From positions 124,001-188,000 of the IMG/VR virus record IMGVR_UViG_3300029286_000009: a stretch of DNA of 64,000 bases. The stretch is one strand, 5' to 3'. The number at the start of each line of letters is the position of its first letter. The stretch's first letter is position 1. Under the pieces are notes generated by a model. It was not told the origin of the DNA, ran no database searches, and saw only the letters and a list, made by a program, of their open reading frames with translations. Positions 23,325-39,536 of this stretch are shown here, piece by piece. The position numbers and the translations under genes were made by a program.

Positions 23325-23741
23325 TTACTCTCTCTCTATCGCGTCATGTGTGGTCTCAACTTTTCCACACCTGGAGCATACACGACTCCACGCTAAATAG
23401 TTCCCATCACGAGATATAGCTGTTGGTTTATCCCATTTGTGTTCGCAGTCTCTCTGAATGGCTTCAAGGTTAAGAGCACGCCCGGCAAACTGCGTATCTT
23501 CGGGATCCCAGTCATACCATGTGATATTCCTACTTTCTTTCTGAAGAAAGTCTGGCACGTCTCTAAACACACAGATACCGACGAGACAATCTAGTTCGCA
23601 CAAAAGAGTTTCGACTCCTTCTCTGGTATAGTCTTGAAAGTTCGATAAGTCATACACATCCCAACTCCTGACACCATAATCGTCTTCTTCTGATGTAACT
23701 ATAATCATTTTATTTCCTTTCTTAGCATCCCAAATCAACAT
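23325..23741 (-). CDS. hypothetical protein with C-terminal CxH..CxxC
   Basis: 138 aa. Confidence 0.5.
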   Translation of the reverse strand: MLIWDAKKGNKMIIVTSEEDDYGVRSWDVYDLSNFQDYTREGVETLLCELDCLVGICVFRDVPDFLQKESRNITWYDWDPEDTQFAGRALNLEAIQRDCEHKWDKPTAISRDGNYLAWSRVCSRCGKVETTHDAIERE

Positions 23742-24513
23742 CTATAGTTGTGTATGTTGGGCTACCATAAGTTGCTTGCCCTACCCACACTGCTATTTTA
23801 TCGTTGATGTTCACTCTTACTTCTTCATGTGTATGACCACACAGAATAGAGAGTCTTGCATTTGTTTTGCAAGCCACTTCACTCAATGCCTTACCCATTC
23901 CTACATTGGAAAAGTGGGGAATGTACATATCGTCTGTTGCTAGCCCATTATACATACATGCTCTTACATAGGGTGGGGCATGAGTTACTACAATGATATG
24001 CCTTGCTCCAATCTTTAGTATTTGGTTGGTTAGTCTATTGGATGCTTTATCCGCTATCTTTTGCATCAAACCGAATGTTGCCCCGACTGTCAACCCGTGA
24101 AAATCATATATTGCACGATAGTCATTGAGTAGAAGCCCAGACCGTTGACTTCCGCCAGCACGACCATCCGCCCAGCCATCGTGACCAATTAGATAAGTGT
24201 GATCAGTTAGTTTAATTGCTGTGCAATTAGTAAGCCAAAATAAATTCTTGTGATCTTCTACAGACCTACGAACCATAGCATATACATGCTCGAATGTTGC
24301 CGCGTATATGTCATGGTTTCCTAAAACGAAGTACACAGGCATCGGGAGATTACCTAGCACTTTCAAGTGATATTTGATATGTTTCGCATCGCTAATATCG
24401 CCACTTATCACTACACCATCCGTTTCTGAAGTGGACAACCTACGCAAGAAATCGCCAAGTGCGTGATCATTCAACCATTCCAAATGGGGGTCAGTTACCC
24501 ATGCGAGTTGCAT
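23722..24513 (-). CDS. Calcineurin-like metallophosphoesterase
   Basis: TDPH, SGDIS, GNHD, THAP, CGHTH motifs. Confidence 0.9.
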   Translation of the reverse strand: MQLAWVTDPHLEWLNDHALGDFLRRLSTSETDGVVISGDISDAKHIKYHLKVLGNLPMPVYFVLGNHDIYAATFEHVYAMVRRSVEDHKNLFWLTNCTAIKLTDHTYLIGHDGWADGRAGGSQRSGLLLNDYRAIYDFHGLTVGATFGLMQKIADKASNRLTNQILKIGARHIIVVTHAPPYVRACMYNGLATDDMYIPHFSNVGMGKALSEVACKTNARLSILCGHTHEEVRVNINDKIAVWVGQATYGSPTYTTIDVDLGC

Positions 24514-27823: not shown

Positions 27824-28684
27824 TCATACAAGGGGGCCCGAGAATCGCTTACACACCACTACTGTAGTGTCGTCTGATAGCATCCCAAGTGCACGCAAGG
27901 ATGGACGAGTGATAGGGTTGGCCTTGGCTAGGAAACGTTGTAATTGGGCTGGATGATCATACCACGTTGCATCCTCCCAGATGTTCTGTATATTAGGAAT
28001 TATGACATCATTTCTACCAGGCAAAGTATGTCCTTCTTTCGCAAGGAAATCATCTATACCGTCTGTGGCTATTGCGATCGAAGTAACATCTCGGGGAAGC
28101 TTAACGATAGAGAATTGTCTGCAGGTCCCAGCATCCGGGTGATTCGCATCCAATTGATGGGCTAAATACGGCGGGGCATTTCCAGGAAATGGTCCTAACG
28201 CGGTGTGTTCTCCTTCAATCCAAATATGCCCGTCGCCAAAGTGAAATGCAAAACTCAGGTTGGGTGATAGATAGAACCCAATCACTGTAAAAAGATAACT
28301 TTCATAGATTAGATTCTTCACTACGTTCTCGTCGTCAGTAATGTCCACAGTACCCGCACGAATTAGCTCCAATAGTCTCTGGCGGCAACACTCCATTACC
28401 CAGGTAGGAATATCCTCCTCTGTAACCCACCAGGAGACGCGGCGTGCGTGTATTACAAGTGCAGGCACCAGATGCACTAATACTTGCGTGCATATTCGAG
28501 AACCAACTTCACTGAAACGCCCCGATCCGCAACCATCCGATACTACTGCGACTATATAGCCAGGGGTAGAAATGTGATCATACGCGTCTTGGTTGTTATA
28601 ACCCGCCGAATCATGGAAGGTACCTATTACACTCGCACCTGCAATCTTGTAGTTGTGCATTATATTCTCCGCATCGGGTAGCAA
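27824..28684 (-). CDS. PP2C-like protein phosphatase
   Basis: GASVIG..H..NNQDA, VVSDGCGS, FGDG, IATDG, DDTT. Confidence 0.85.
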   Translation of the reverse strand: MLPDAENIMHNYKIAGASVIGTFHDSAGYNNQDAYDHISTPGYIVAVVSDGCGSGRFSEVGSRICTQVLVHLVPALVIHARRVSWWVTEEDIPTWVMECCRQRLLELIRAGTVDITDDENVVKNLIYESYLFTVIGFYLSPNLSFAFHFGDGHIWIEGEHTALGPFPGNAPPYLAHQLDANHPDAGTCRQFSIVKLPRDVTSIAIATDGIDDFLAKEGHTLPGRNDVIIPNIQNIWEDATWYDHPAQLQRFLAKANPITRPSLRALGMLSDDTTVVVCKRFSGPLV

Positions 28685-28771: not shown

Positions 28772-29593
28772 TCAAGTAGTAAAGCCACCTAGCACGGTTT
28801 GGCTGCCAAAACCTGCTTGGGAAACCGGTCCCAGGTTGGCTGCTTGAGAGACCGCGATGGCACTTTGAGAAAAGACAGCAAACGCTTTTCGGATGTCAGA
28901 CGCTGAATTTCCTGGGGTGAGGATCCACTGTGCAGGAATCCCCATACCGGTAAATACGCGGGTAAAGTTGGTATGACGGTCTTCTATACCCATCCCAACT
29001 ATAATATTACGCTCCATACGCAAGAGGTCCTCTGCAATAGTCTTAACATCTTGGGCGGACACCCCGCGTGAGGCGTTGTCTGCCCCATCAGTTGCGAACA
29101 GTGTAACTGTTCGGCAGGACTGTGCTTCTTCAGCAAGTTCTTGTGCTTTAAGGAAAACTGTTCCAAGTACCACCTTAGCTTGTGCATAAAGAGGAGTACT
29201 CCCGTAGCTTGGATCGTAAACACCAAGACCGAAAGGTGGCACGTTGTCCAGCTCGCAATAGGGGGTGTAAACTTGTCCAGATAGTGCACGAGCGTGGAAA
29301 AGAATGGCGTCCTTTTGTTTAGATTCTTTTAATGCTCGGATACACCCGTTCACACCCTTTACCATGGCATCAGGACCATCTTTGATGCAACTGATGGATC
29401 CGGAGTCATCAATTAGTAGAGTAACCAATATCACTGTGGAGGGTAGTTGCATCTGCCCCACATTGTTCCCCATGCCACCCTGGATTTGGGCACCAATATC
29501 CTGCAAGTTTAGAAGGTTGGCAGAAGTAGGGGACAACACCCCGTCGTCTTGTGCAGACTGGAGTAAGTTCTGAAGACTTGCGTTCTGGCTCAT
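28772..29593 (-). CDS. vWA-domain protein (TerY-like)
   Basis: MIDAS-like LLIDDSGSI, STPLY, ATDG.DN. Confidence 0.8.
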   Translation of the reverse strand: MSQNASLQNLLQSAQDDGVLSPTSANLLNLQDIGAQIQGGMGNNVGQMQLPSTVILVTLLIDDSGSISCIKDGPDAMVKGVNGCIRALKESKQKDAILFHARALSGQVYTPYCELDNVPPFGLGVYDPSYGSTPLYAQAKVVLGTVFLKAQELAEEAQSCRTVTLFATDGADNASRGVSAQDVKTIAEDLLRMERNIIVGMGIEDRHTNFTRVFTGMGIPAQWILTPGNSASDIRKAFAVFSQSAIAVSQAANLGPVSQAGFGSQTVLGGFTT

Positions 29594-29681: not shown

Positions 29682-30143
29682 TTAGTTATATTCTTCAGTT
29701 TCTATAAAATCAGGATATATCTCTTCTATGGGGAGCCGGTTAAAACGTAAAAAATCGTCTCGATACAAGTAATATCCCATCCCTTCATGCCACCACTGCC
29801 CATTTGCGCACCAGTGTTCGTCTATACTCAGCCCATGATCGGGCTGCCACACTGGAATAGGAGAAAGATGGCATCCTTTCGGCCCCAAACTACAACAATT
29901 TCTGCATACCAGTTCTTCTACATTTACATGCCACATATCTTGTACGCCTTTCTGTTTTTGATATCTTGCGCGGGTAAACAAAAACCGGAAATTCTCTATG
30001 GGGGTTGTTGGGACGATTTCTACGCGTCCGTATTGACGCTCCACCGCCCCAACAGTTCTATGAATAATACTAGCTTTTGTAAAGGGGAGAACGCCTTCCC
30101 TTGCGTTCCCCCCGGTCCATATACTTTCAATATAGTAAAACAC
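29682..30143 (-). CDS. hypothetical protein; true start uncertain (N-terminal half overlaps structured RNA)
   Basis: Cys-rich C-terminal part MWHVNVEELVCRNC...; 5' part coincides with strong hairpins. Confidence 0.4.
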   Translation of the reverse strand: MFYYIESIWTGGNAREGVLPFTKASIIHRTVGAVERQYGRVEIVPTTPIENFRFLFTRARYQKQKGVQDMWHVNVEELVCRNCCSLGPKGCHLSPIPVWQPDHGLSIDEHWCANGQWWHEGMGYYLYRDDFLRFNRLPIEEIYPDFIETEEYN

Positions 30144-30205
30144 TACATCGTTAGTTGCCTAGCGTATTCCGTTCGCTTATTCATGCTTTAGGCGCTTGAA
30201 AATTC

Positions 30206-30280
30206 CGTGTCGCACTACTGCTATGCTACCACGCCATATTTTTTGGGGGCGTGGGGTGGATCTGCACCACCGTCTACACG
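30206..30280 (-). ncRNA. Circularly permuted tRNA-like domain (Y RNA/YrlA-like or two-piece tmRNA-like)
   Basis: CGTGT-AGAC-GGTGG-TGCAGAT-CCACC-CCACGCC-C-CCA-AAAAATAT-GGCGTGG-TA-GCAT-AGCAGTA-GTGC-G-ACACG; all four cloverleaf stems pair, 3' half precedes 5' half. Confidence 0.75.
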
Positions 30281-30431
30281 TAAGTTGCCATAGCACTGCT
30301 AATGGGAAATTGCTTAACGGCGTTTAGCCTTGGGTCAATCACCTCACGGGATTTAGCCTGATACACCCCTATGCCGTAGTGGGTGCTCTTGTGAACGTGC
30401 TCCTAAGCTTACGACCCAACTGTATGGAACC

Positions 30432-30519
30432 TTCTTGCTTGCTAGATAGTATATTCGTCTAATTATTTAACGTCCAATCGCCCCAACTAACTATTTGTAC
30501 ACTACCTAGCAAGCAAGAA
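30432..30519 (-). repeat. 22-bp inverted repeat (long hairpin)
   Basis: TTCTTGCTTGCTAG arms are perfect; extension pairs via two G-U only on minus strand. Confidence 0.85.
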
Positions 30520-30605
30520 AGTCCTGGTATTTTTGGCGGTGTGCCATCTACCTACACATGTGTAGCATGTAGGGTGGCTAAAGACAGCACACCACAGACA
30601 TAACA

Positions 30606-31376
30606 TTAACTGGTGGTTCGTATCGCGTCCAGAAAGCAGGAATAAACTTCTTCTCCTATCGCTGCGACGGGCACCGCCACCTGATTGGCACGTGCTCTTG
30701 CCTGCTTTACCTCACGTATCATCTGGTCAAGGACACTGAGTCCAACCATCTTCTGCCGTGGGGTGGGGCAACCGGTGTAACGTGTATTCTCATAGTGACC
30801 AACGACCTTTTGTTCGTCAACCACAATGACCTGTTCCTTATGTTCTTTTGTCGCGGGGGCGATGGACACGGGAACCTTCGTCATCTCGGTCTTATTCGCC
30901 TTTACAGGCTCAACAGTTCGACGTACACCTTCCAGCTCAGCAGATGTGTCGTTCTCCCAGTGTACGGTTGTATCCAGCGTAGGAATCCTGTCCGCAAGAT
31001 TCCGAATCCGGATAAGTTCTTTTTCAAGCCACATCAACATCGTGACCGGAACTGCTGTGATCACTTTGCCATTGGGCAGCGTAAGATCTGCAACCGCCTG
31101 CATATTGGCGAGCTCACGCTGGTACTCGGCGTCCATGCGATCAACAATTGCCTTGCCTATATACTTAAATCTTTCCGGCACGGTTGTCGTCAGACTGACC
31201 CTTTCTCCAGCACCGGCTTCCTCCGCCACACGATCATCGTCGTGCATCTTCAAAATTTTAACGTGTCCATTGAGCAGTTCTTTCTTGTCCAAGAGTCGAC
31301 TGGTCTCGTCCAGCATCTTAGCCTGAACCGCCTCCAGCTCCGGAATTTTTGCCAAAAGTTCGTGCAACATTCCCAT
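30606..31376 (-). CDS. Conserved coiled-coil protein (recalled as DUF7873-like)
   Basis: LHELLA, TTV, VPVTMLMWLEK, IPTLD..W, ATKEH.EQV, VVG, VKQARARAN pattern; family name from memory only. Confidence 0.55.
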   Translation of the reverse strand: MGMLHELLAKIPELEAVQAKMLDETSRLLDKKELLNGHVKILKMHDDDRVAEEAGAGERVSLTTTVPERFKYIGKAIVDRMDAEYQRELANMQAVADLTLPNGKVITAVPVTMLMWLEKELIRIRNLADRIPTLDTTVHWENDTSAELEGVRRTVEPVKANKTEMTKVPVSIAPATKEHKEQVIVVDEQKVVGHYENTRYTGCPTPRQKMVGLSVLDQMIREVKQARARANQVAVPVAAIGEEVYSCFLDAIRTTS

Positions 31377-38147: not shown

Positions 38148-38419
38148 AAATCCTCCTTGTGTTAGTTAAAATTCAGTTGCAGATTCCCACCGATAAACAT
38201 TTTCTTGCTCCATTCTTTCTATGTCCCACGTTCCTTCTGGGGTTTGGTAGACAAAGCCAACAAAGTATACATCATTACCTTTTCCGCAATCTGGAGAATA
38301 GAAGTCATCAATGTAAGCCCAACACGGAAACTGCTCGGGGTCCCCGCTAACTTCAGTAAACTCGTTCTTCTCTTCAATTTGCTTCCTGAGTCTAACCCAC
38401 TCAGCTTCATTTGTAACTA

Positions 38420-38560
38420 ATGGCGTTTTGTTTTCCTTTTTATTTATTTTTTTTATTCTTACCCTCCTCTTTTACTATATATATATTTGAGGGTATAGCG
38501 GTATTAGTACTCTAATACTGCCTATACTAGTATAGGAGGGTTGAGAAAGAAAATGATATA
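38420..38560. promoter_or_regulatory. Divergence point between the two gene arms, with stacked palindromes
   Basis: Pyrimidine-to-purine switch; GCGGTATTAG/CTAATACTGC hairpin(38498-38521); perfect 16-bp palindrome CCTATACTAGTATAGG(38521-36). Confidence 0.6.
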
Positions 38561-38731
38561 AAAGAAAGAGGTGCGGAATGTCTCATGATAGAGACAATAA
38601 ATGTCAGAGAGAAGACTGTAAGTGGTGGAATCCTGATTTTCCGATCAGTTGTCTTCAGTGGGATATTCAACGTTCTGCTGTGATTCTCGGTATCGAGAAG
38701 TGTGCTCGACATACAGTGGAGGAGAAGCGAA

Positions 38732-38926
38732 ATGCCGCACAGCATTGACGACAAATGTTATCGAGAAGATTGTTGGTGGTGGGATAATCAGCAGCCTTGT
38801 AACTGTTTATTGACCGCAACAAAATCGGTAGATCCTCAAACTTGTGAGGACCATAGACGTAATGCTAATTATCTCTGTGGATGCGGATTTTTTCATGGAC
38901 CAGGGGAACGGTGCGGTCCATGGTAA
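38732..38926 (+). CDS. Cys-rich small protein ending CGCG.FH.P.ERCGPW
   Basis: SD GGAGGAG; motif shared with 46051. Confidence 0.6.
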   Translation: MPHSIDDKCYREDCWWWDNQQPCNCLLTATKSVDPQTCEDHRRNANYLCGCGFFHGPGERCGPW

Positions 38927-39017
38927 ATTTGAATTTAGGAGGTTAGCATGTGGCACATAAATGCCCCAAAACTCTCGGATTTGATGCCGAGGGACTACAT
39001 TAAGAAGGAGCCTATAA

Positions 39018-39536
39018 ATGGCACAATTGAAGTTACTGAACGAAGAGAGCCTCAACAAGGAGTTACTGAACATTGGGAAGAAGCGGGATGCTGTGGAGAA
39101 AGTTCTGGAGCAGTCCCGCCAGCAGATGAACGAAGCCTACGCTAAAGCCGACGAGTTGAAGAAACAGAAAGTATTGTTTCAAACACTGAAAGAAACGATC
39201 GGTGAGACAGCAAAAGTGAGATCTGCTTACGCACGTGGTCTAGCTCAAGGTATGGGTATTGTTTTCGCTGATGGGGAGGCAGAATCATCATTGTTGGCGT
39301 TACTGGAGGAGTTTGCATTACAGGATGCGAGCAAAGAGACACGAGAGTCCAAGGGGAAGTCAACACCTAGAGCAAATGTTATTGTGCCTGAGAAGCCGAA
39401 AGGTAAACGTGGACGACCGCCTAAGGTCAAGGTTACAGAATCTGAAGAGCTCGAGGTTAATACCTCAGCCATTTCTAATCTTGCTGACTCTGATAGCGTG
39501 GAGGAAGTTGAGTATGACGATGGTTACGACGACTAA
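39018..39536 (+). CDS. Coiled-coil protein with AT-hook and acidic tail
   Basis: KGKRGRPPK; acidic C-terminus. Confidence 0.6.
   Translation: MAQLKLLNEESLNKELLNIGKKRDAVEKVLEQSRQQMNEAYAKADELKKQKVLFQTLKETIGETAKVRSAYARGLAQGMGIVFADGEAESSLLALLEEFALQDASKETRESKGKSTPRANVIVPEKPKGKRGRPPKVKVTESEELEVNTSAISNLADSDSVEEVEYDDGYDD

What the first reader, a model, noticed from the sequence alone, without database searches (positions are those of the whole stretch)
29985..30600. ~600-nt structured RNA around the tRNA-like core, with a tmRNA-tag-like reading frame
Seen (minus strand; G-U pairs agree with this strand): a 22-bp hairpin (30432-30519), TTGGGTC/GACCCAA, CCATTAGC/GCTATGG, GCCTA/TAGGC, GGGGGGAACGC/GCGTTCTCCCC (30084-30113), GCGTC/GACGC and GTTGGG/CCCAAC stems. 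About 50 nt after the 5' half of the tRNA-like domain comes TAG|GCA ACT AAC GAT GTA GTG (A-T-N-D-V-V), reminiscent of tmRNA resume frames (ANDEN/ANDN). It stays open for 158 codons into ORF 29682. Inference (speculative): either a permuted tmRNA derivative that could append a long domain to stalled proteins, or a large scaffold ncRNA.
Basis: partly seen in the sequence, partly recalled or inferred. Interest (0 to 1): 0.6.

Follow-up and report, generated by a model that had tools for sequence, protein, structure and literature searches.

The report
Phage Y-RNA-like permuted tRNA mimic
The region holds a real, conserved non-coding RNA of a jumbo phage built around an 'inside-out' (circularly permuted) tRNA-like domain and always partnered with one uncharacterised protein gene; it resembles bacterial Y RNAs (YrlA), not a tmRNA, and the tag-like reading frame is an accident.

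Summary
The window lies in a 259.7-kb lake phage.

The core (window 30280-30206, minus strand) is a circularly permuted tRNA. It runs anticodon-stem 3' strand, T arm, acceptor 3' strand, C73-CCA, A-rich linker ending in U, acceptor 5' strand, D arm, anticodon-stem 5' strand.

The same element lies next to a DUF7873 gene, almost always just downstream, in nearly all of about 100 metagenomic, viral and MAG loci. All 21 pairs show compensatory changes.

About 340 nt (30420-30084) match a shared family architecture:
- helix A enclosing tandem U-N-A-R-R-N hexamers
- a helix flanking the tRNA-like domain
- an AU-rich hairpin
- an 11-13 bp terminal GC hairpin

The only Rfam resemblance is sub-threshold YrlA (22-36 bits; gathering score 69).

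The tmRNA reading fails:
- no G3:U70 pair (0 of 39)
- no conserved reading frame
- the 'ATNDVV' codons lie on a conserved hairpin
- some relatives lack a free CCA end
- the phage has a genuine tmRNA elsewhere

I propose a Y-RNA-like tRNA mimic that forms a particle with DUF7873. That function is inferred, not shown. The three outer hairpins could not be tested.

The parts
30606..31376 (-). DUF7873 gene (256 aa), the only gene co-conserved with the RNA and its likely protein partner
   Evidence: Pfam PF25283, E 7e-48. About 90 relatives found in metagenome and viral contigs. It is the only neighbour shared across loci. The AF2 model has pLDDT 88 and no clear fold match. A homo-oligomer model scores ipSAE 0.48 against a best control of 0.00.
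30535..30599 (-). Long hairpin just after the DUF7873 stop codon. Specific to this window, with no counterpart in relatives.
   Evidence: MFE fold, coordinates. No second copy in the phage genome. Conservation could not be tested.
30430..30521 (-). Specific to this window.
   Evidence: Absent from relatives, where helix A starts within about 20 nt of the stop codon. One promoter-like match lies inside it (30476-30448), which is no more than chance gives.
30330..30420 (-). Helix A (GUUGGGUC at 30420-30413 with GACCCAA at 30336-30330) enclosing a domain with UNARR-type motifs such as AUCAGGCUAAAU. This is the family's 5' domain.
   Evidence: Alignments. Compensatory variants include UUCGGGG/CCCCGAA, UUUGGGG/CCCCAAA, CUCGGG/CCCGAG and CUGGGG/CCCCAG. 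Matched duplex energy is -17.5 against -15.7 kcal/mol mismatched, 11/5000 permutations. Tandem hexamers: 97 observed against 6.5 expected across 39 members.
30288..30305 (-). Hairpin C (CCAUUAGC/GCUAUGG). Alternatively, the same bases form the 5' strand of the bipartite helix that flanks the tRNA-like domain.
   Evidence: In the family the flanking helix gives -17.4 kcal/mol matched against -12.1 mismatched, 0/2000 permutations. The window's version is weak (-11.2) but in the family register.
30206..30280 (-). Circularly permuted tRNA-like domain. Segments in order: AC-stem 3' strand 30280-30276; variable 30275-30272; T arm 30271-30255; acceptor 3' strand 30254-30248; C73 30247; CCA 30246-30244; linker AAAAAUAU 30243-30236; acceptor 5' strand 30235-30229; UA 30228-30227; D arm 30226-30212; G26 30211; AC-stem 5' strand 30210-30206.
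   Evidence: Read. Model R1 scores 86.9 bits on window 30173-30311 and finds one copy in the phage genome. On 39 members 93.9% of cells are paired and all 21 pairs change on both sides. The window's T loop (UGCAGAU) and D loop (AGCAGUA) depart from the family's canonical UUCRAAU and AGYGGUA.
30185..30205 (-). Single-stranded 3' side of the internal loop next to the tRNA-like domain. In the family it reads A-U-N-A-R-R-C-U-N-A-R, and here it is shifted to UUCAAGCGCCUAAAG.
   Evidence: 27 of 39 members match the motif at this place; the window does not match strictly.
30128..30149 (-). AU-rich hairpin (GAUGUAGUG-UUUU-ACUAUAUUG).
   Evidence: By my reading of the folds and sequences, relatives have an AU-rich hairpin at the same place, often with a CUUGAAA-type 7-nt loop.
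30084..30113 (-). Terminal GC-rich hairpin (11 bp, loop AAGGGAAG) followed by UUUA. This is the likely 3' end of the RNA.
   Evidence: 27 of 35 members have a GC-rich hairpin of at least 7 bp (mostly 11-13 bp) at the same distance, and 23 of those have an AGG/GGA loop. The simple terminator scan does not call it, because the U run is short.
30003..30053 (-). Hairpin GUUGGGG...CCCAAC enclosing GCGUC/GACGC. It lies beyond the family's 3' end, in the leader of the next ORF.
   Evidence: No counterpart in relatives. Not testable.
29682..29939 (-). Small Cys-rich ORF (85 aa from ATG 29939). The 153-aa GTG-started ORF to 30143 is its spurious upstream extension.
   Evidence: An AAAGG sits about 10 nt before the ATG. 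In the 64%-identical relative the gene after the gap is 90 aa.

Best explanation
The region encodes a non-coding RNA of about 340 nt or more on the minus strand (conserved part 30420-30084). It belongs to a family, absent from Rfam 15, that is found next to DUF7873 genes in phages.

Its centre is a circularly permuted tRNA-like four-way junction. The acceptor stem is closed by ...C73-CCA-AAAAAUAU..., and the 'anticodon stem' opens into the rest of the RNA. This is the topology of bacterial YrlA Y RNAs.

Shown by sequence comparison:
- the permuted cloverleaf
- helix A
- the helix flanking the tRNA-like domain
- the terminal hairpin
- arrays of a U-N-A-R-R(-N) motif
- the near-obligate linkage to DUF7873

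Inferred:
1. The RNA is co-transcribed with DUF7873, because in most relatives helix A starts within about 20 nt of the stop codon.
2. In the window's subtype, host RNase P cuts between U30236 and G30235. The basis is a 7-bp acceptor stem and U at -1. The 3' side is then trimmed to the encoded CCA. The result is a nicked two-piece tRNA mimic, as shown experimentally for M. smegmatis YrlA.
3. The RNA works as a scaffold or decoy particle, as Ro60-Y RNA does. An oligomeric DUF7873 or a host factor binds the repeated UNARR motifs. The tRNA-shaped module engages or diverts tRNA-recognising host proteins such as RNases, modification enzymes or tRNA-directed defence nucleases.

It does not encode a tag peptide.
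For: Structure and strand:
- z = -6.8 on the minus strand against -2.6 on the plus strand.
- G-U pairs fit the minus strand (my reading of the arms).

Permuted tRNA and its linkage:
- It is found downstream of DUF7873 in 47 of 73 loci by a strict pattern.
- Model R1 finds it in 29 of 37 loci searched, among them most of those the strict pattern had missed.
- It is present in 9 of 10 independent MAG loci.
- There is a single copy in the window's own phage, at 86.9 bits.
- Covariation: 93.9% of cells paired, all 21 pairs with double changes, 0/500 shuffles as high. The D stem (96%) and AC stem (77%) were not selection criteria.

Other shared helices and motifs:
- Flanking helix: 0/2000 permutations.
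- Helix A: 11/5000 permutations.
- Terminal hairpin in 27 of 35 members.
- Hexamer arrays enriched about 15-fold.

Likeness to YrlA:
- It is the only Rfam family that matches, always below threshold.
- YrlA is described as a circularly permuted tRNA mimic (bioRxiv 10.1101/312249).
- M. smegmatis YrlA has a 7-bp acceptor stem, is cut by RNase P and is found in vivo with a CCA end (PMC4201824).

RNase P determinants: U at -1 in 31 of 39 members, median linker 8-9 nt.

Protein partner:
- Only DUF7873 is co-conserved.
- The DUF7873 self-association model scores ipSAE 0.48, best control 0.00. That mark was reached by 20 of 30 proteins solved as pairs and 1 of 23 solved as single chains. Runs agree in at least 75% of contacts, and partner pLDDT is at least 78.
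Against: - There is no expression or end-mapping data. No RNA run holds the sequence.
- DUF7873 is mildly acidic (pI about 6) and has no recognisable RNA-binding fold. Binding to the RNA is inferred from synteny only.
- The window's copy is the most divergent one. Its T and D loops are non-canonical. Its flanking helix is weak (-11.2 kcal/mol, about the mismatched mean). It has only one strict tandem hexamer.
- The family does not reach Rfam's YrlA threshold.
- The window's phage has no Ro60 gene.
- The acceptor arm differs between subfamilies, so RNase P processing and a free CCA end cannot be general.
Confidence: 0.55

Rival explanations
1. A two-piece (permuted) tmRNA derivative. It would be charged at its CCA end, enter stalled ribosomes and append the peptide encoded from GCA 30158 onward.
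For: The gene order (T arm, acceptor 3' strand, CCA, linker, acceptor 5' strand) is that of permuted tmRNA genes. There is a weak tmRNA_permuted hit of 12.7 bits, E 6.1. CCA is encoded and the acceptor stem has 7 bp.
Against: - ARAGORN finds nothing here, although it finds the phage's real tmRNA. Rfam confirms that one at 61.9 bits against a gathering score of 47.
- 3:70 is C:G here and G:U in 0 of 39 members.
- No frame is conserved after the tRNA-like domain, and the window's frame has no in-frame stop for 158 codons.
- The 'tag' codons lie on a conserved hairpin, and the frame crosses the conserved terminal hairpin.
- The domain keeps a full D arm and a short anticodon-like stem, unlike tmRNA.
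- Some members have a closed 4-bp acceptor hairpin.
- The phage has no SmpB gene.
Confidence: 0.03
2. A permuted pre-tRNA gene. After RNase P and 3' processing, and cleavage and ligation of the flanks (for example by RtcB), it would mature into a working tRNA with an N-A-R (Leu-type) anticodon, as in Cyanidioschyzon permuted tRNAs.
For: The D and T arms are canonical in most relatives. After the AC-stem 5' strand the sequence reads A-U-N-A-R-R-C, like an anticodon loop. RtcB lies directly after the RNA in L094 and is present in 2 of 5 other phages. The window's phage has no tRNA genes.
Against: - Pair 31:39 is mismatched in 24 of 39 members.
- I saw no bulge-helix-bulge motif.
- The N-A-R 'anticodon' is one unit of a repeated hexamer motif found all over the RNA.
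- Large conserved 5' and 3' domains would be discarded.
- Subfamilies with a 4-bp closed acceptor stem cannot give a tRNA.
- The window's phage has no RtcB gene.
- The window's T and D loops lack U55, A58 and G18.
Confidence: 0.07
3. A cis-acting 3' UTR element of the DUF7873 mRNA, with no function of its own in trans. It would be a stabiliser, or a signal that lets RNase P form the mRNA's 3' end (as the mascRNA element does for MALAT1).
For: The RNA follows the stop codon with no room for a promoter in most relatives. It has the same orientation in almost all loci. It ends in a terminator-like hairpin.
Against: - In L033, L038 and L039 the element lies upstream of the gene.
- About 300 nt of conserved multi-domain structure with repeated motifs is far more than a 3'-end signal needs.
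- Known Y RNAs are likewise co-transcribed with their protein partner (PMC4201824), so co-transcription does not argue against a trans role.
Confidence: 0.15
4. An ordinary Y RNA that works with a Ro60 (Rsr) protein supplied by the host (or by the phage in some relatives). It would tether Ro60 to PNPase, as in Thermus phage phiLo.
For: Sub-threshold full-length YrlA matches in relatives. A TROVE gene lies about 4 kb upstream of the DUF7873-RNA module in one 215-kb phage. Phage Ro60-Y RNA particles are known (PMC12135203).
Against: - There is no TROVE gene in the window's phage.
- Among five other phages, one has a TROVE match over the Pfam cut-off (G002) and one a sub-cut-off match (G003, 20.6 bits against 23).
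- Among five MAGs, none has a match over the cut-off; one has a sub-cut-off match (21.4 bits).
- I saw no conserved GNCGAAN0-1G motif. The CGAA in helix A covaries away in relatives.
- The RNA's 5' and 3' ends do not pair with each other.
- The constant partner is DUF7873, not Ro60.
Confidence: 0.12

Closest known systems
YrlA (Y RNA-like A, Rfam RF02553), especially Mycobacterium smegmatis YrlA
   Same: - Circularly permuted tRNA-like domain in the order AC-stem 3' strand, T arm, acceptor hairpin, D arm, AC-stem 5' strand.
- Canonical T- and D-loop sequences in most members.
- The domain sits on a helix formed by the sequences on either side of it, with internal loops.
- It is co-transcribed with a partner protein gene.
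- It occurs in phages.
- M. smegmatis YrlA also has a 7-bp acceptor stem, is cut by RNase P and is found in vivo with a CCA end as a two-piece RNA (PMC4201824).
   Different: - It does not reach the Rfam threshold. The window gives no hit, and relatives give 22-36 bits against 69.
- The partner gene is DUF7873, not Ro60/Rsr.
- It is about three times longer. It has an extra 5' domain (helix A with tandem UNARR hexamers) and an extra 3' domain (AU-rich hairpin and a conserved terminal hairpin).
- In the window's subtype the CCA is encoded in the genome.
- No Ro60-binding motif was recognised.
Two-piece (permuted) tmRNA of alpha-proteobacteria, cyanobacteria and beta-proteobacteria (Rfam RF04321 and relatives)
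   Same: Permuted gene order, with the CCA-bearing acceptor piece upstream of the piece that starts with the acceptor 5' strand. Similar overall size. Likely processing into two base-paired pieces.
   Different: No G3:U70 pair. No conserved tag frame, resume codon or stop. A full D arm and a short anticodon-like stem. No match from tmRNA models. The phage has a separate, genuine one-piece tmRNA.
Circularly permuted tRNA genes (Cyanidioschyzon merolae and some archaea)
   Same: The 3' half lies upstream of the 5' half, joined through the acceptor ends. The break is in the anticodon region.
   Different: No bulge-helix-bulge splice motif. The anticodon arm is incomplete. There are long conserved flanking domains. 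The setting is bacterial and phage, where no splicing endonuclease is known.
Protein-sponge sRNAs with repeated motifs (CsrB/RsmZ type)
   Same: Many copies of a short purine-rich motif are displayed in single-stranded stretches and hairpin loops of one RNA.
   Different: The motif is U-N-A-R-R(-N) with a 6-nt period, not A(N)GGA. It is joined to a tRNA mimic. The binding protein is unknown. This is a resemblance only, recalled from general knowledge and not tested here.

Membership tests
tmRNA (one-piece or permuted) | tRNA-like domain with acceptor stem, T arm and a 3' CCA end | tested here: met
   T arm 30271-30255, 7-bp acceptor stem, C73-CCA at 30247-30244.
tmRNA (one-piece or permuted) | G3:U70 alanine identity pair | tested here: not met
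   C3:G70 in the window. Across 39 members the pairs are C:G 23, G:C 12, U:A 3 and U:G 1, with no G3:U70.
tmRNA (one-piece or permuted) | Short tag reading frame with a resume codon and an in-frame stop, conserved among relatives | tested here: not met
   The window's frame stays open for 158 codons through two conserved hairpins. No frame or peptide is shared by 18 members.
tmRNA (one-piece or permuted) | Recognition by ARAGORN or Rfam tmRNA models | tested here: not met
   ARAGORN finds 0 genes in the window. tmRNA_permuted scores 12.7 bits against 47. The same tools find the phage's real tmRNA at G000:215104-215625, at 61.9 bits against 47.
tmRNA (one-piece or permuted) | Pseudoknots and a long P2 helix in place of the anticodon arm | tested here: inconclusive
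   A bipartite helix flanks the domain in the family. No pseudoknot search was possible.
YrlA / bacterial Y RNA | Permuted tRNA-like module (AC-stem 3' strand, T arm, acceptor hairpin, D arm, AC-stem 5' strand) | tested here: met
   The alignments to the YrlA model show the same order of elements.
YrlA / bacterial Y RNA | Score at or above Rfam's gathering threshold (69 bits) | tested here: not met
   No YrlA hit in the window at E up to 10. Relatives score 22-36 bits.
YrlA / bacterial Y RNA | Encoded next to a Ro60/Rsr (TROVE) gene | tested here: not met
   No TROVE gene in the 96%-complete phage. Among five other phages, one has a match over the Pfam cut-off and one a sub-cut-off match (20.6 bits). 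Among five MAGs, none is over the cut-off and one has a sub-cut-off match (21.4 bits).
YrlA / bacterial Y RNA | Ro60-binding stem with the GNCGAAN0-1G motif, formed by the RNA's 5' and 3' ends | tested here: inconclusive
   A helix flanks the module, but I saw no conserved GNCGAA motif. The CGAA in helix A covaries away in relatives. The RNA's ends are not mapped.
YrlA / bacterial Y RNA | Binding to Ro60 and modification by TruB and DusA | not testable with these tools
   Needs biochemistry.
Circularly permuted tRNA gene | 3' half upstream of 5' half, joined by a short intervening sequence | tested here: met
   (median linker 8-9 nt).
Circularly permuted tRNA gene | Leader and trailer form a bulge-helix-bulge motif, and joining gives a normal 5-bp anticodon arm with a 7-nt loop | tested here: not met
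   Pair 31:39 is unpaired in 24 of 39 members. The flanks form a long bipartite helix instead. Some members have a 4-bp closed acceptor hairpin.
Canonical tRNA | Colinear cloverleaf detected by ARAGORN or Rfam RF00005 | tested here: not met

The most novel reading that the evidence does not exclude
DUF7873 and this RNA form a previously unrecognised class of phage ribonucleoprotein. Its RNA is a processed, CCA-ended (possibly chargeable) two-piece tRNA mimic fused to arrays of UNARR motifs. An oligomeric phage protein replaces Ro60. The particle captures or diverts host tRNA-directed machinery, such as RNase P, exoribonucleases or anticodon-targeting defence nucleases, during infection.
Probability: 0.25. 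Interest if true: 0.8.

Novelty: new variant of a known kind. Interest (0 to 1): 0.62.

Why it matters
Bacterial Y RNAs have so far been found by their position next to Ro60. This locus shows the same inside-out tRNA design in a larger RNA with a different and wholly uncharacterised protein partner.

The pairing recurs in about 100 loci from soil, sediment, freshwater and marine phages and MAGs. That gives DUF7873 its first functional lead. It also defines an RNA family that current annotation misses, since ARAGORN finds nothing and no Rfam family reaches its gathering score.

The family offers a natural series of acceptor-arm variants: encoded CCA, a hairpin linker without CCA, and a closed loop. 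That series can be used to ask what the tRNA shape is for in Y-like RNAs.

For annotation, the practical lesson is that the 153-aa ORF 29682-30143 is over-extended and that no tag peptide should be predicted here.

Tried and rejected
- **Known RNA families.** Rfam at gathering thresholds gave nothing on the window or for the element on 20 relatives. At loose E-values only chance-level Phe_leader and tmRNA_permuted hits appeared.
- **Similar DNA.** blastn of the region against 50,697 phage records gave no match. An exact 17-mer of the T arm in IMG/VR gave 16 hits, all chance, with no flanking similarity.
- **Single-protein locus search.** DUF7873 alone found no relative in IMG/VR. An alignment was needed.
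- **Close relative.** The 64%-identical DUF7873 (P0002) sits on a 6.3-kb contig whose DNA could not be served. I tried to reach that phage through the neighbouring 273-aa protein, but those contigs lack the module. The window-specific hairpins therefore stay untested.
- **Expression.** All 10 runs that hold the sequence are DNA runs kept as contigs, so I did not lay reads.
- **Group I intron or permuted intron-exon idea.** I dropped it. No intron model matches, and the flanks form their own conserved helices.
- **A coding reading of the hexamers** (alternating hydrophobic and basic residues). I dropped it. Stops occur in every frame and nothing beyond the motif is conserved.
- **DUF7873 fold.** No convincing match in PDB (Foldseek best E 0.1; VIA Z 8.2 or less over short helical stretches), BFVD or the ESM Atlas beyond its own family. 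Weak PUR-alpha/Whirly rows (probability 0.15) are not evidence.
- **RNA-repair link.** RtcB directly follows the RNA in one locus. It is absent from the window's phage and lies far from the module in two other phages. I did not keep it as a general association.
- **Promoter and terminator scan.** Nothing beyond chance.
Full report
**Context**

The window is bases 124001-188000 of a 259,732-bp virus record, 96% complete by CheckV. It comes from lake and freshwater metagenomes. Genes run on the minus strand up to about 38 kb of the window.

The finding covers the 666-nt gap between a DUF7873 gene (30606-31376, minus strand; Pfam E 7e-48) and a small ORF.

**Observation**

The gap folds at -231.9 kcal/mol on the minus strand, z = -6.8. 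The plus strand gives z = -2.6. By my reading of its two arms, the long hairpin at 30521-30430 has four G-U pairs that would be A-C on the other strand. The GCA ACT AAC GAT GTA GTG frame exists at 30158-30141 and runs open into ORF 29682-30143.

**The core is a circularly permuted tRNA**

Read 5' to 3' on the minus strand, the segments are:

| Segment | Sequence | Window coordinates |
|---|---|---|
| Anticodon-stem 3' strand | CGUGU | 30280-30276 |
| Variable region | AGAC | 30275-30272 |
| T arm | | 30271-30255 |
| Acceptor 3' strand | CCACGCC | 30254-30248 |
| Discriminator | C | 30247 |
| CCA | CCA | 30246-30244 |
| Linker | AAAAAUAU | 30243-30236 |
| Acceptor 5' strand | GGCGUGG | 30235-30229 |
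| U8 A9 | UA | 30228-30227 |
| D arm | | 30226-30212 |
| G26 | G | 30211 |
| Anticodon-stem 5' strand | ACACG | 30210-30206 |

ARAGORN and Rfam at gathering thresholds report nothing here. The only loose hit is tmRNA_permuted at 12.7 bits, covering just the T arm and acceptor hairpin.

**Relatives**

An alignment of DUF7873 proteins pulled 79 metagenome loci and 12 viral loci.
- nhmmer with the window's gap found weak but specific matches just downstream of the DUF7873 gene in ten of them, always over the permuted core.
- A strict pattern found the element in 47 of 73 loci with at least 450 nt of downstream sequence. The pattern required a 5-bp T stem, a 7-bp acceptor stem, NCCA, a linker and a D stem.
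- A covariance model built from 39 members (R1) matched 29 of 37 further loci searched, among them most of those the strict pattern had missed.
- It found the element in 9 of 10 loci from an independent genome collection, mostly Myxococcota MAGs.
- It found exactly one copy in the window's own phage, at 86.9 bits on window 30173-30311.

On the 39-member alignment 93.9% of cells pair. All 21 pairs show changes on both sides, and no shuffle or slid register comes close. The T and acceptor stems were selection criteria, so their pairing percentage is circular. The D stem (96%) and anticodon-like stem (77%) were not.

Most relatives have canonical GGUUCRAAUCC T loops and AGYGGUA D loops. The window's copy is the most divergent, with T loop UGCAGAU and D loop AGCAGUA.

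**Shared architecture beyond the core**

The family shares these elements, 5' to 3':

1. **Helix A.** It starts within about 20 nt of the DUF7873 stop codon. The consensus is UUCGGGG with CCCCGAA, with compensatory variants. Matched duplex energy beats mismatched with 11/5000 permutations.
2. **A GC hairpin and tandem hexamers inside helix A.** The hexamers read U-[C/G/U]-A-R-R-N. Tandem pairs number 97 observed against 6.5 expected over 39 members.
3. **A junction motif**, RAGGCUCAAG. The window has AAGGCUAAACG.
4. **A bipartite helix formed by the sequences on either side of the tRNA-like domain.** Matched energy is -17.4 and mismatched -12.1 kcal/mol, 0/2000 permutations. The window's version is weak at -11.2 but sits in the same register.
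5. **An 11-12-nt single-stranded stretch next to the domain**, reading A-U-N-A-R-R-C-U-N-A-R.
6. **An AU-rich hairpin**, often with a CUUGAAA-type loop. The window's is at 30149-30128.
7. **A terminal GC hairpin** of 11-13 bp with an AGG-type loop, in 27 of 35 members.

The conserved RNA in the window is therefore about 30420-30084. The two long hairpins at 30599-30430 and the hairpin at 30053-30003 have no counterpart in the relatives available. They are single-copy in the phage. They cannot be judged, because the only close relative's DNA was not retrievable.

**The tmRNA reading fails**

- The 3:70 pair is C:G here and never G:U in 39 members.
- Translating the stretch after the domain in 18 members shows no shared frame, resume codon, stop or peptide beyond the hexamer motif.
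The frame then crosses the terminal hairpin and merges with the upstream extension of a small ORF.
- That ORF's likely start is ATG 29939, with an AAAGG about 10 nt upstream. The homologous position in the 64%-identical relative holds a 90-aa gene.
- Members found by the model without requiring CCA fall into three acceptor types:
  - 7 bp with NCCA and an A-rich linker, as in the window
  - 7 bp with a hairpin-bearing linker and no CCA
  - a closed 4-bp hairpin

  A free, chargeable end is therefore not a family property.
- The phage has no SmpB gene.
- The phage does encode a genuine one-piece tmRNA at genome 215104-215625. ARAGORN finds it, and Rfam scores it 61.9 bits against a gathering score of 47.

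**Closest known: YrlA**

At loose thresholds the only Rfam family that hits the relatives' element is YrlA (RF02553). Scores are 22-36 bits against a gathering score of 69, and several alignments cover the full model.

The YrlA model has the same order of elements. YrlA is described in the literature as resembling a circularly permuted tRNA with a closed acceptor loop (10.1101/312249).

M. smegmatis YrlA has a 7-bp acceptor stem. It is cut by RNase P in vitro. In vivo it is found as two fragments, one with a CCA end (PMC4201824).

The window's subtype has the same determinants. Its acceptor stem has 7 bp, U sits at -1 in 31 of 39 members, and the linker is short and A-rich. It also encodes the CCA itself.

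The differences are these:
- It falls below the Rfam threshold.
- It is about three times longer, with extra 5' and 3' domains.
- I recognised no Ro60-binding motif.
- Its constant partner is a different protein.

TROVE/Ro60 is absent from the window's phage. Among five other phages, one (G002) has a match over the Pfam cut-off, about 4 kb upstream of the module, and one (G003) has a sub-cut-off match of 20.6 bits. Among five MAGs, none has a match over the cut-off.

**The partner**

Of 13 neighbouring proteins in the window, only DUF7873 recurs across the loci. In L033, L038 and L039 the RNA lies upstream of the gene instead of downstream. This looks like a two-part module.

The AF2 model of DUF7873 is confident (pLDDT 88). 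It matches no solved or predicted fold outside its own family. The protein is mildly acidic.

A three-copy model supports self-association:
- ipSAE is 0.48, with a best control of 0.00.
- That mark was reached by 20 of 30 proteins solved as pairs and by 1 of 23 solved as single chains.
- The runs agree in at least 75% of contacts, and the partner's pLDDT is at least 78.

This supports binding but does not show it. No paper in the library mentions DUF7873.

**Mechanism**

- *Shown:* a conserved, strand-specific, multi-domain RNA with a permuted tRNA module and repeated UNARR motifs, tied to DUF7873.
- *Inferred:* co-transcription with DUF7873. RNase P cleavage at 30236/30235 with trimming to the encoded CCA, giving a nicked two-piece tRNA mimic. 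A scaffold or decoy role like that of Ro60-Y RNA particles, including the phage phiLo particle that engages host PNPase (PMC12135203). The UNARR arrays would serve as a multivalent protein-binding platform.

None of this could be tested, because no RNA-seq run holds the phage.

**Rivals**

| Rival | Confidence |
|---|---|
| Cis-acting 3' UTR element only | 0.15 |
| Ordinary Y RNA working with host Ro60 | 0.12 |
| Permuted pre-tRNA that matures into a tRNA | 0.07 |
| tmRNA derivative | 0.03 |

**Verdict**

The feature is real. The tmRNA-tag idea is wrong. The unit is about 340 nt rather than 600 nt on present evidence.

It is a new variant of a known kind (Y-RNA-like tRNA mimic). It belongs to an RNA family that no Rfam 15 model reaches and that I did not find described in the paper library searched. 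That family is widespread in phages.

Noticed in passing
outside the window: G000:C1:215104-215625 (locus L131:305-825): The same phage encodes a full-length one-piece tmRNA. ARAGORN predicts the tag ASSPGYEAKLTWWRHAGNRVP*, and Rfam tmRNA scores 61.9 bits against a gathering score of 47. The phage has no SmpB gene.
   Followed up: partly
whole phage genome (G000, 259,732 bp): ARAGORN finds no canonical tRNA gene anywhere in this jumbo phage. Several relatives carry tRNA arrays right beside the DUF7873-RNA module, for example 20 tRNAs upstream in L080 and a tRNA directly after the RNA in the Myxococcota MAG loci.
   Followed up: partly
window 28772-29593 (-): The 273-aa protein has no Pfam hit but over 1,000 homologues. 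Among the hits that carry a source name, many are cyanobacterial (Leptolyngbyaceae and others) at about 50% identity. This may be a host-derived gene and a hint that the host is a cyanobacterium.
   Followed up: no
window 27824-28684 (-) and 23722-24513 (-): A PP2C-type protein phosphatase and a calcineurin-like metallophosphoesterase lie a few genes downstream of the RNA. The PP2C gene stays next to the 273-aa gene in related phages (L128, L130).
   Followed up: no
locus L094:2143-2517: An RtcB RNA ligase gene starts about 25 nt after the terminal hairpin of the RNA in this relative. This recalls the Salmonella rsr-yrlBA-rtcBA operon. RtcB is also in L059, and in two other phages far from the module, but it is absent from the window's phage.
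   Followed up: partly
phage G002 (holds L108): TROVE at G002:C1:57659-58603 (-): A Ro60 (TROVE) gene lies about 4 kb upstream, on the same strand, of the DUF7873-RNA module in this 215-kb phage. It is the only phage of six examined with a TROVE match over the Pfam cut-off.
   Followed up: partly
loci L120, L119, L118, L122, L042, L086 (RNA just downstream of DUF7873): A subfamily has a closed 4-bp acceptor hairpin (CGGC-CUCCUAA-GCCG) in place of the 7-bp stem with CCA. Another subfamily (L058, L030, L041, L046, L048, L056 and others) has a hairpin inside the linker and no CCA.
   Followed up: partly
window 30476-30448 (-): A sigma-70-like promoter match (TGGACG, 17 nt spacer, TATACT) sits inside the long hairpin. 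It would start transcription about 20 nt before helix A. One match against 1.8 expected by chance, so this is not evidence.
   Followed up: no
window about 38150-39020: Gene orientation and GC skew switch here, from minus-strand genes to the left to plus-strand genes to the right. This marks a divergent transcription or replication boundary.
   Followed up: no
locus L130:8879-10183: A related 381-kb phage carries a reverse transcriptase (RVT_1) gene and a Fic-domain gene near its homologue of the 273-aa protein.
   Followed up: no
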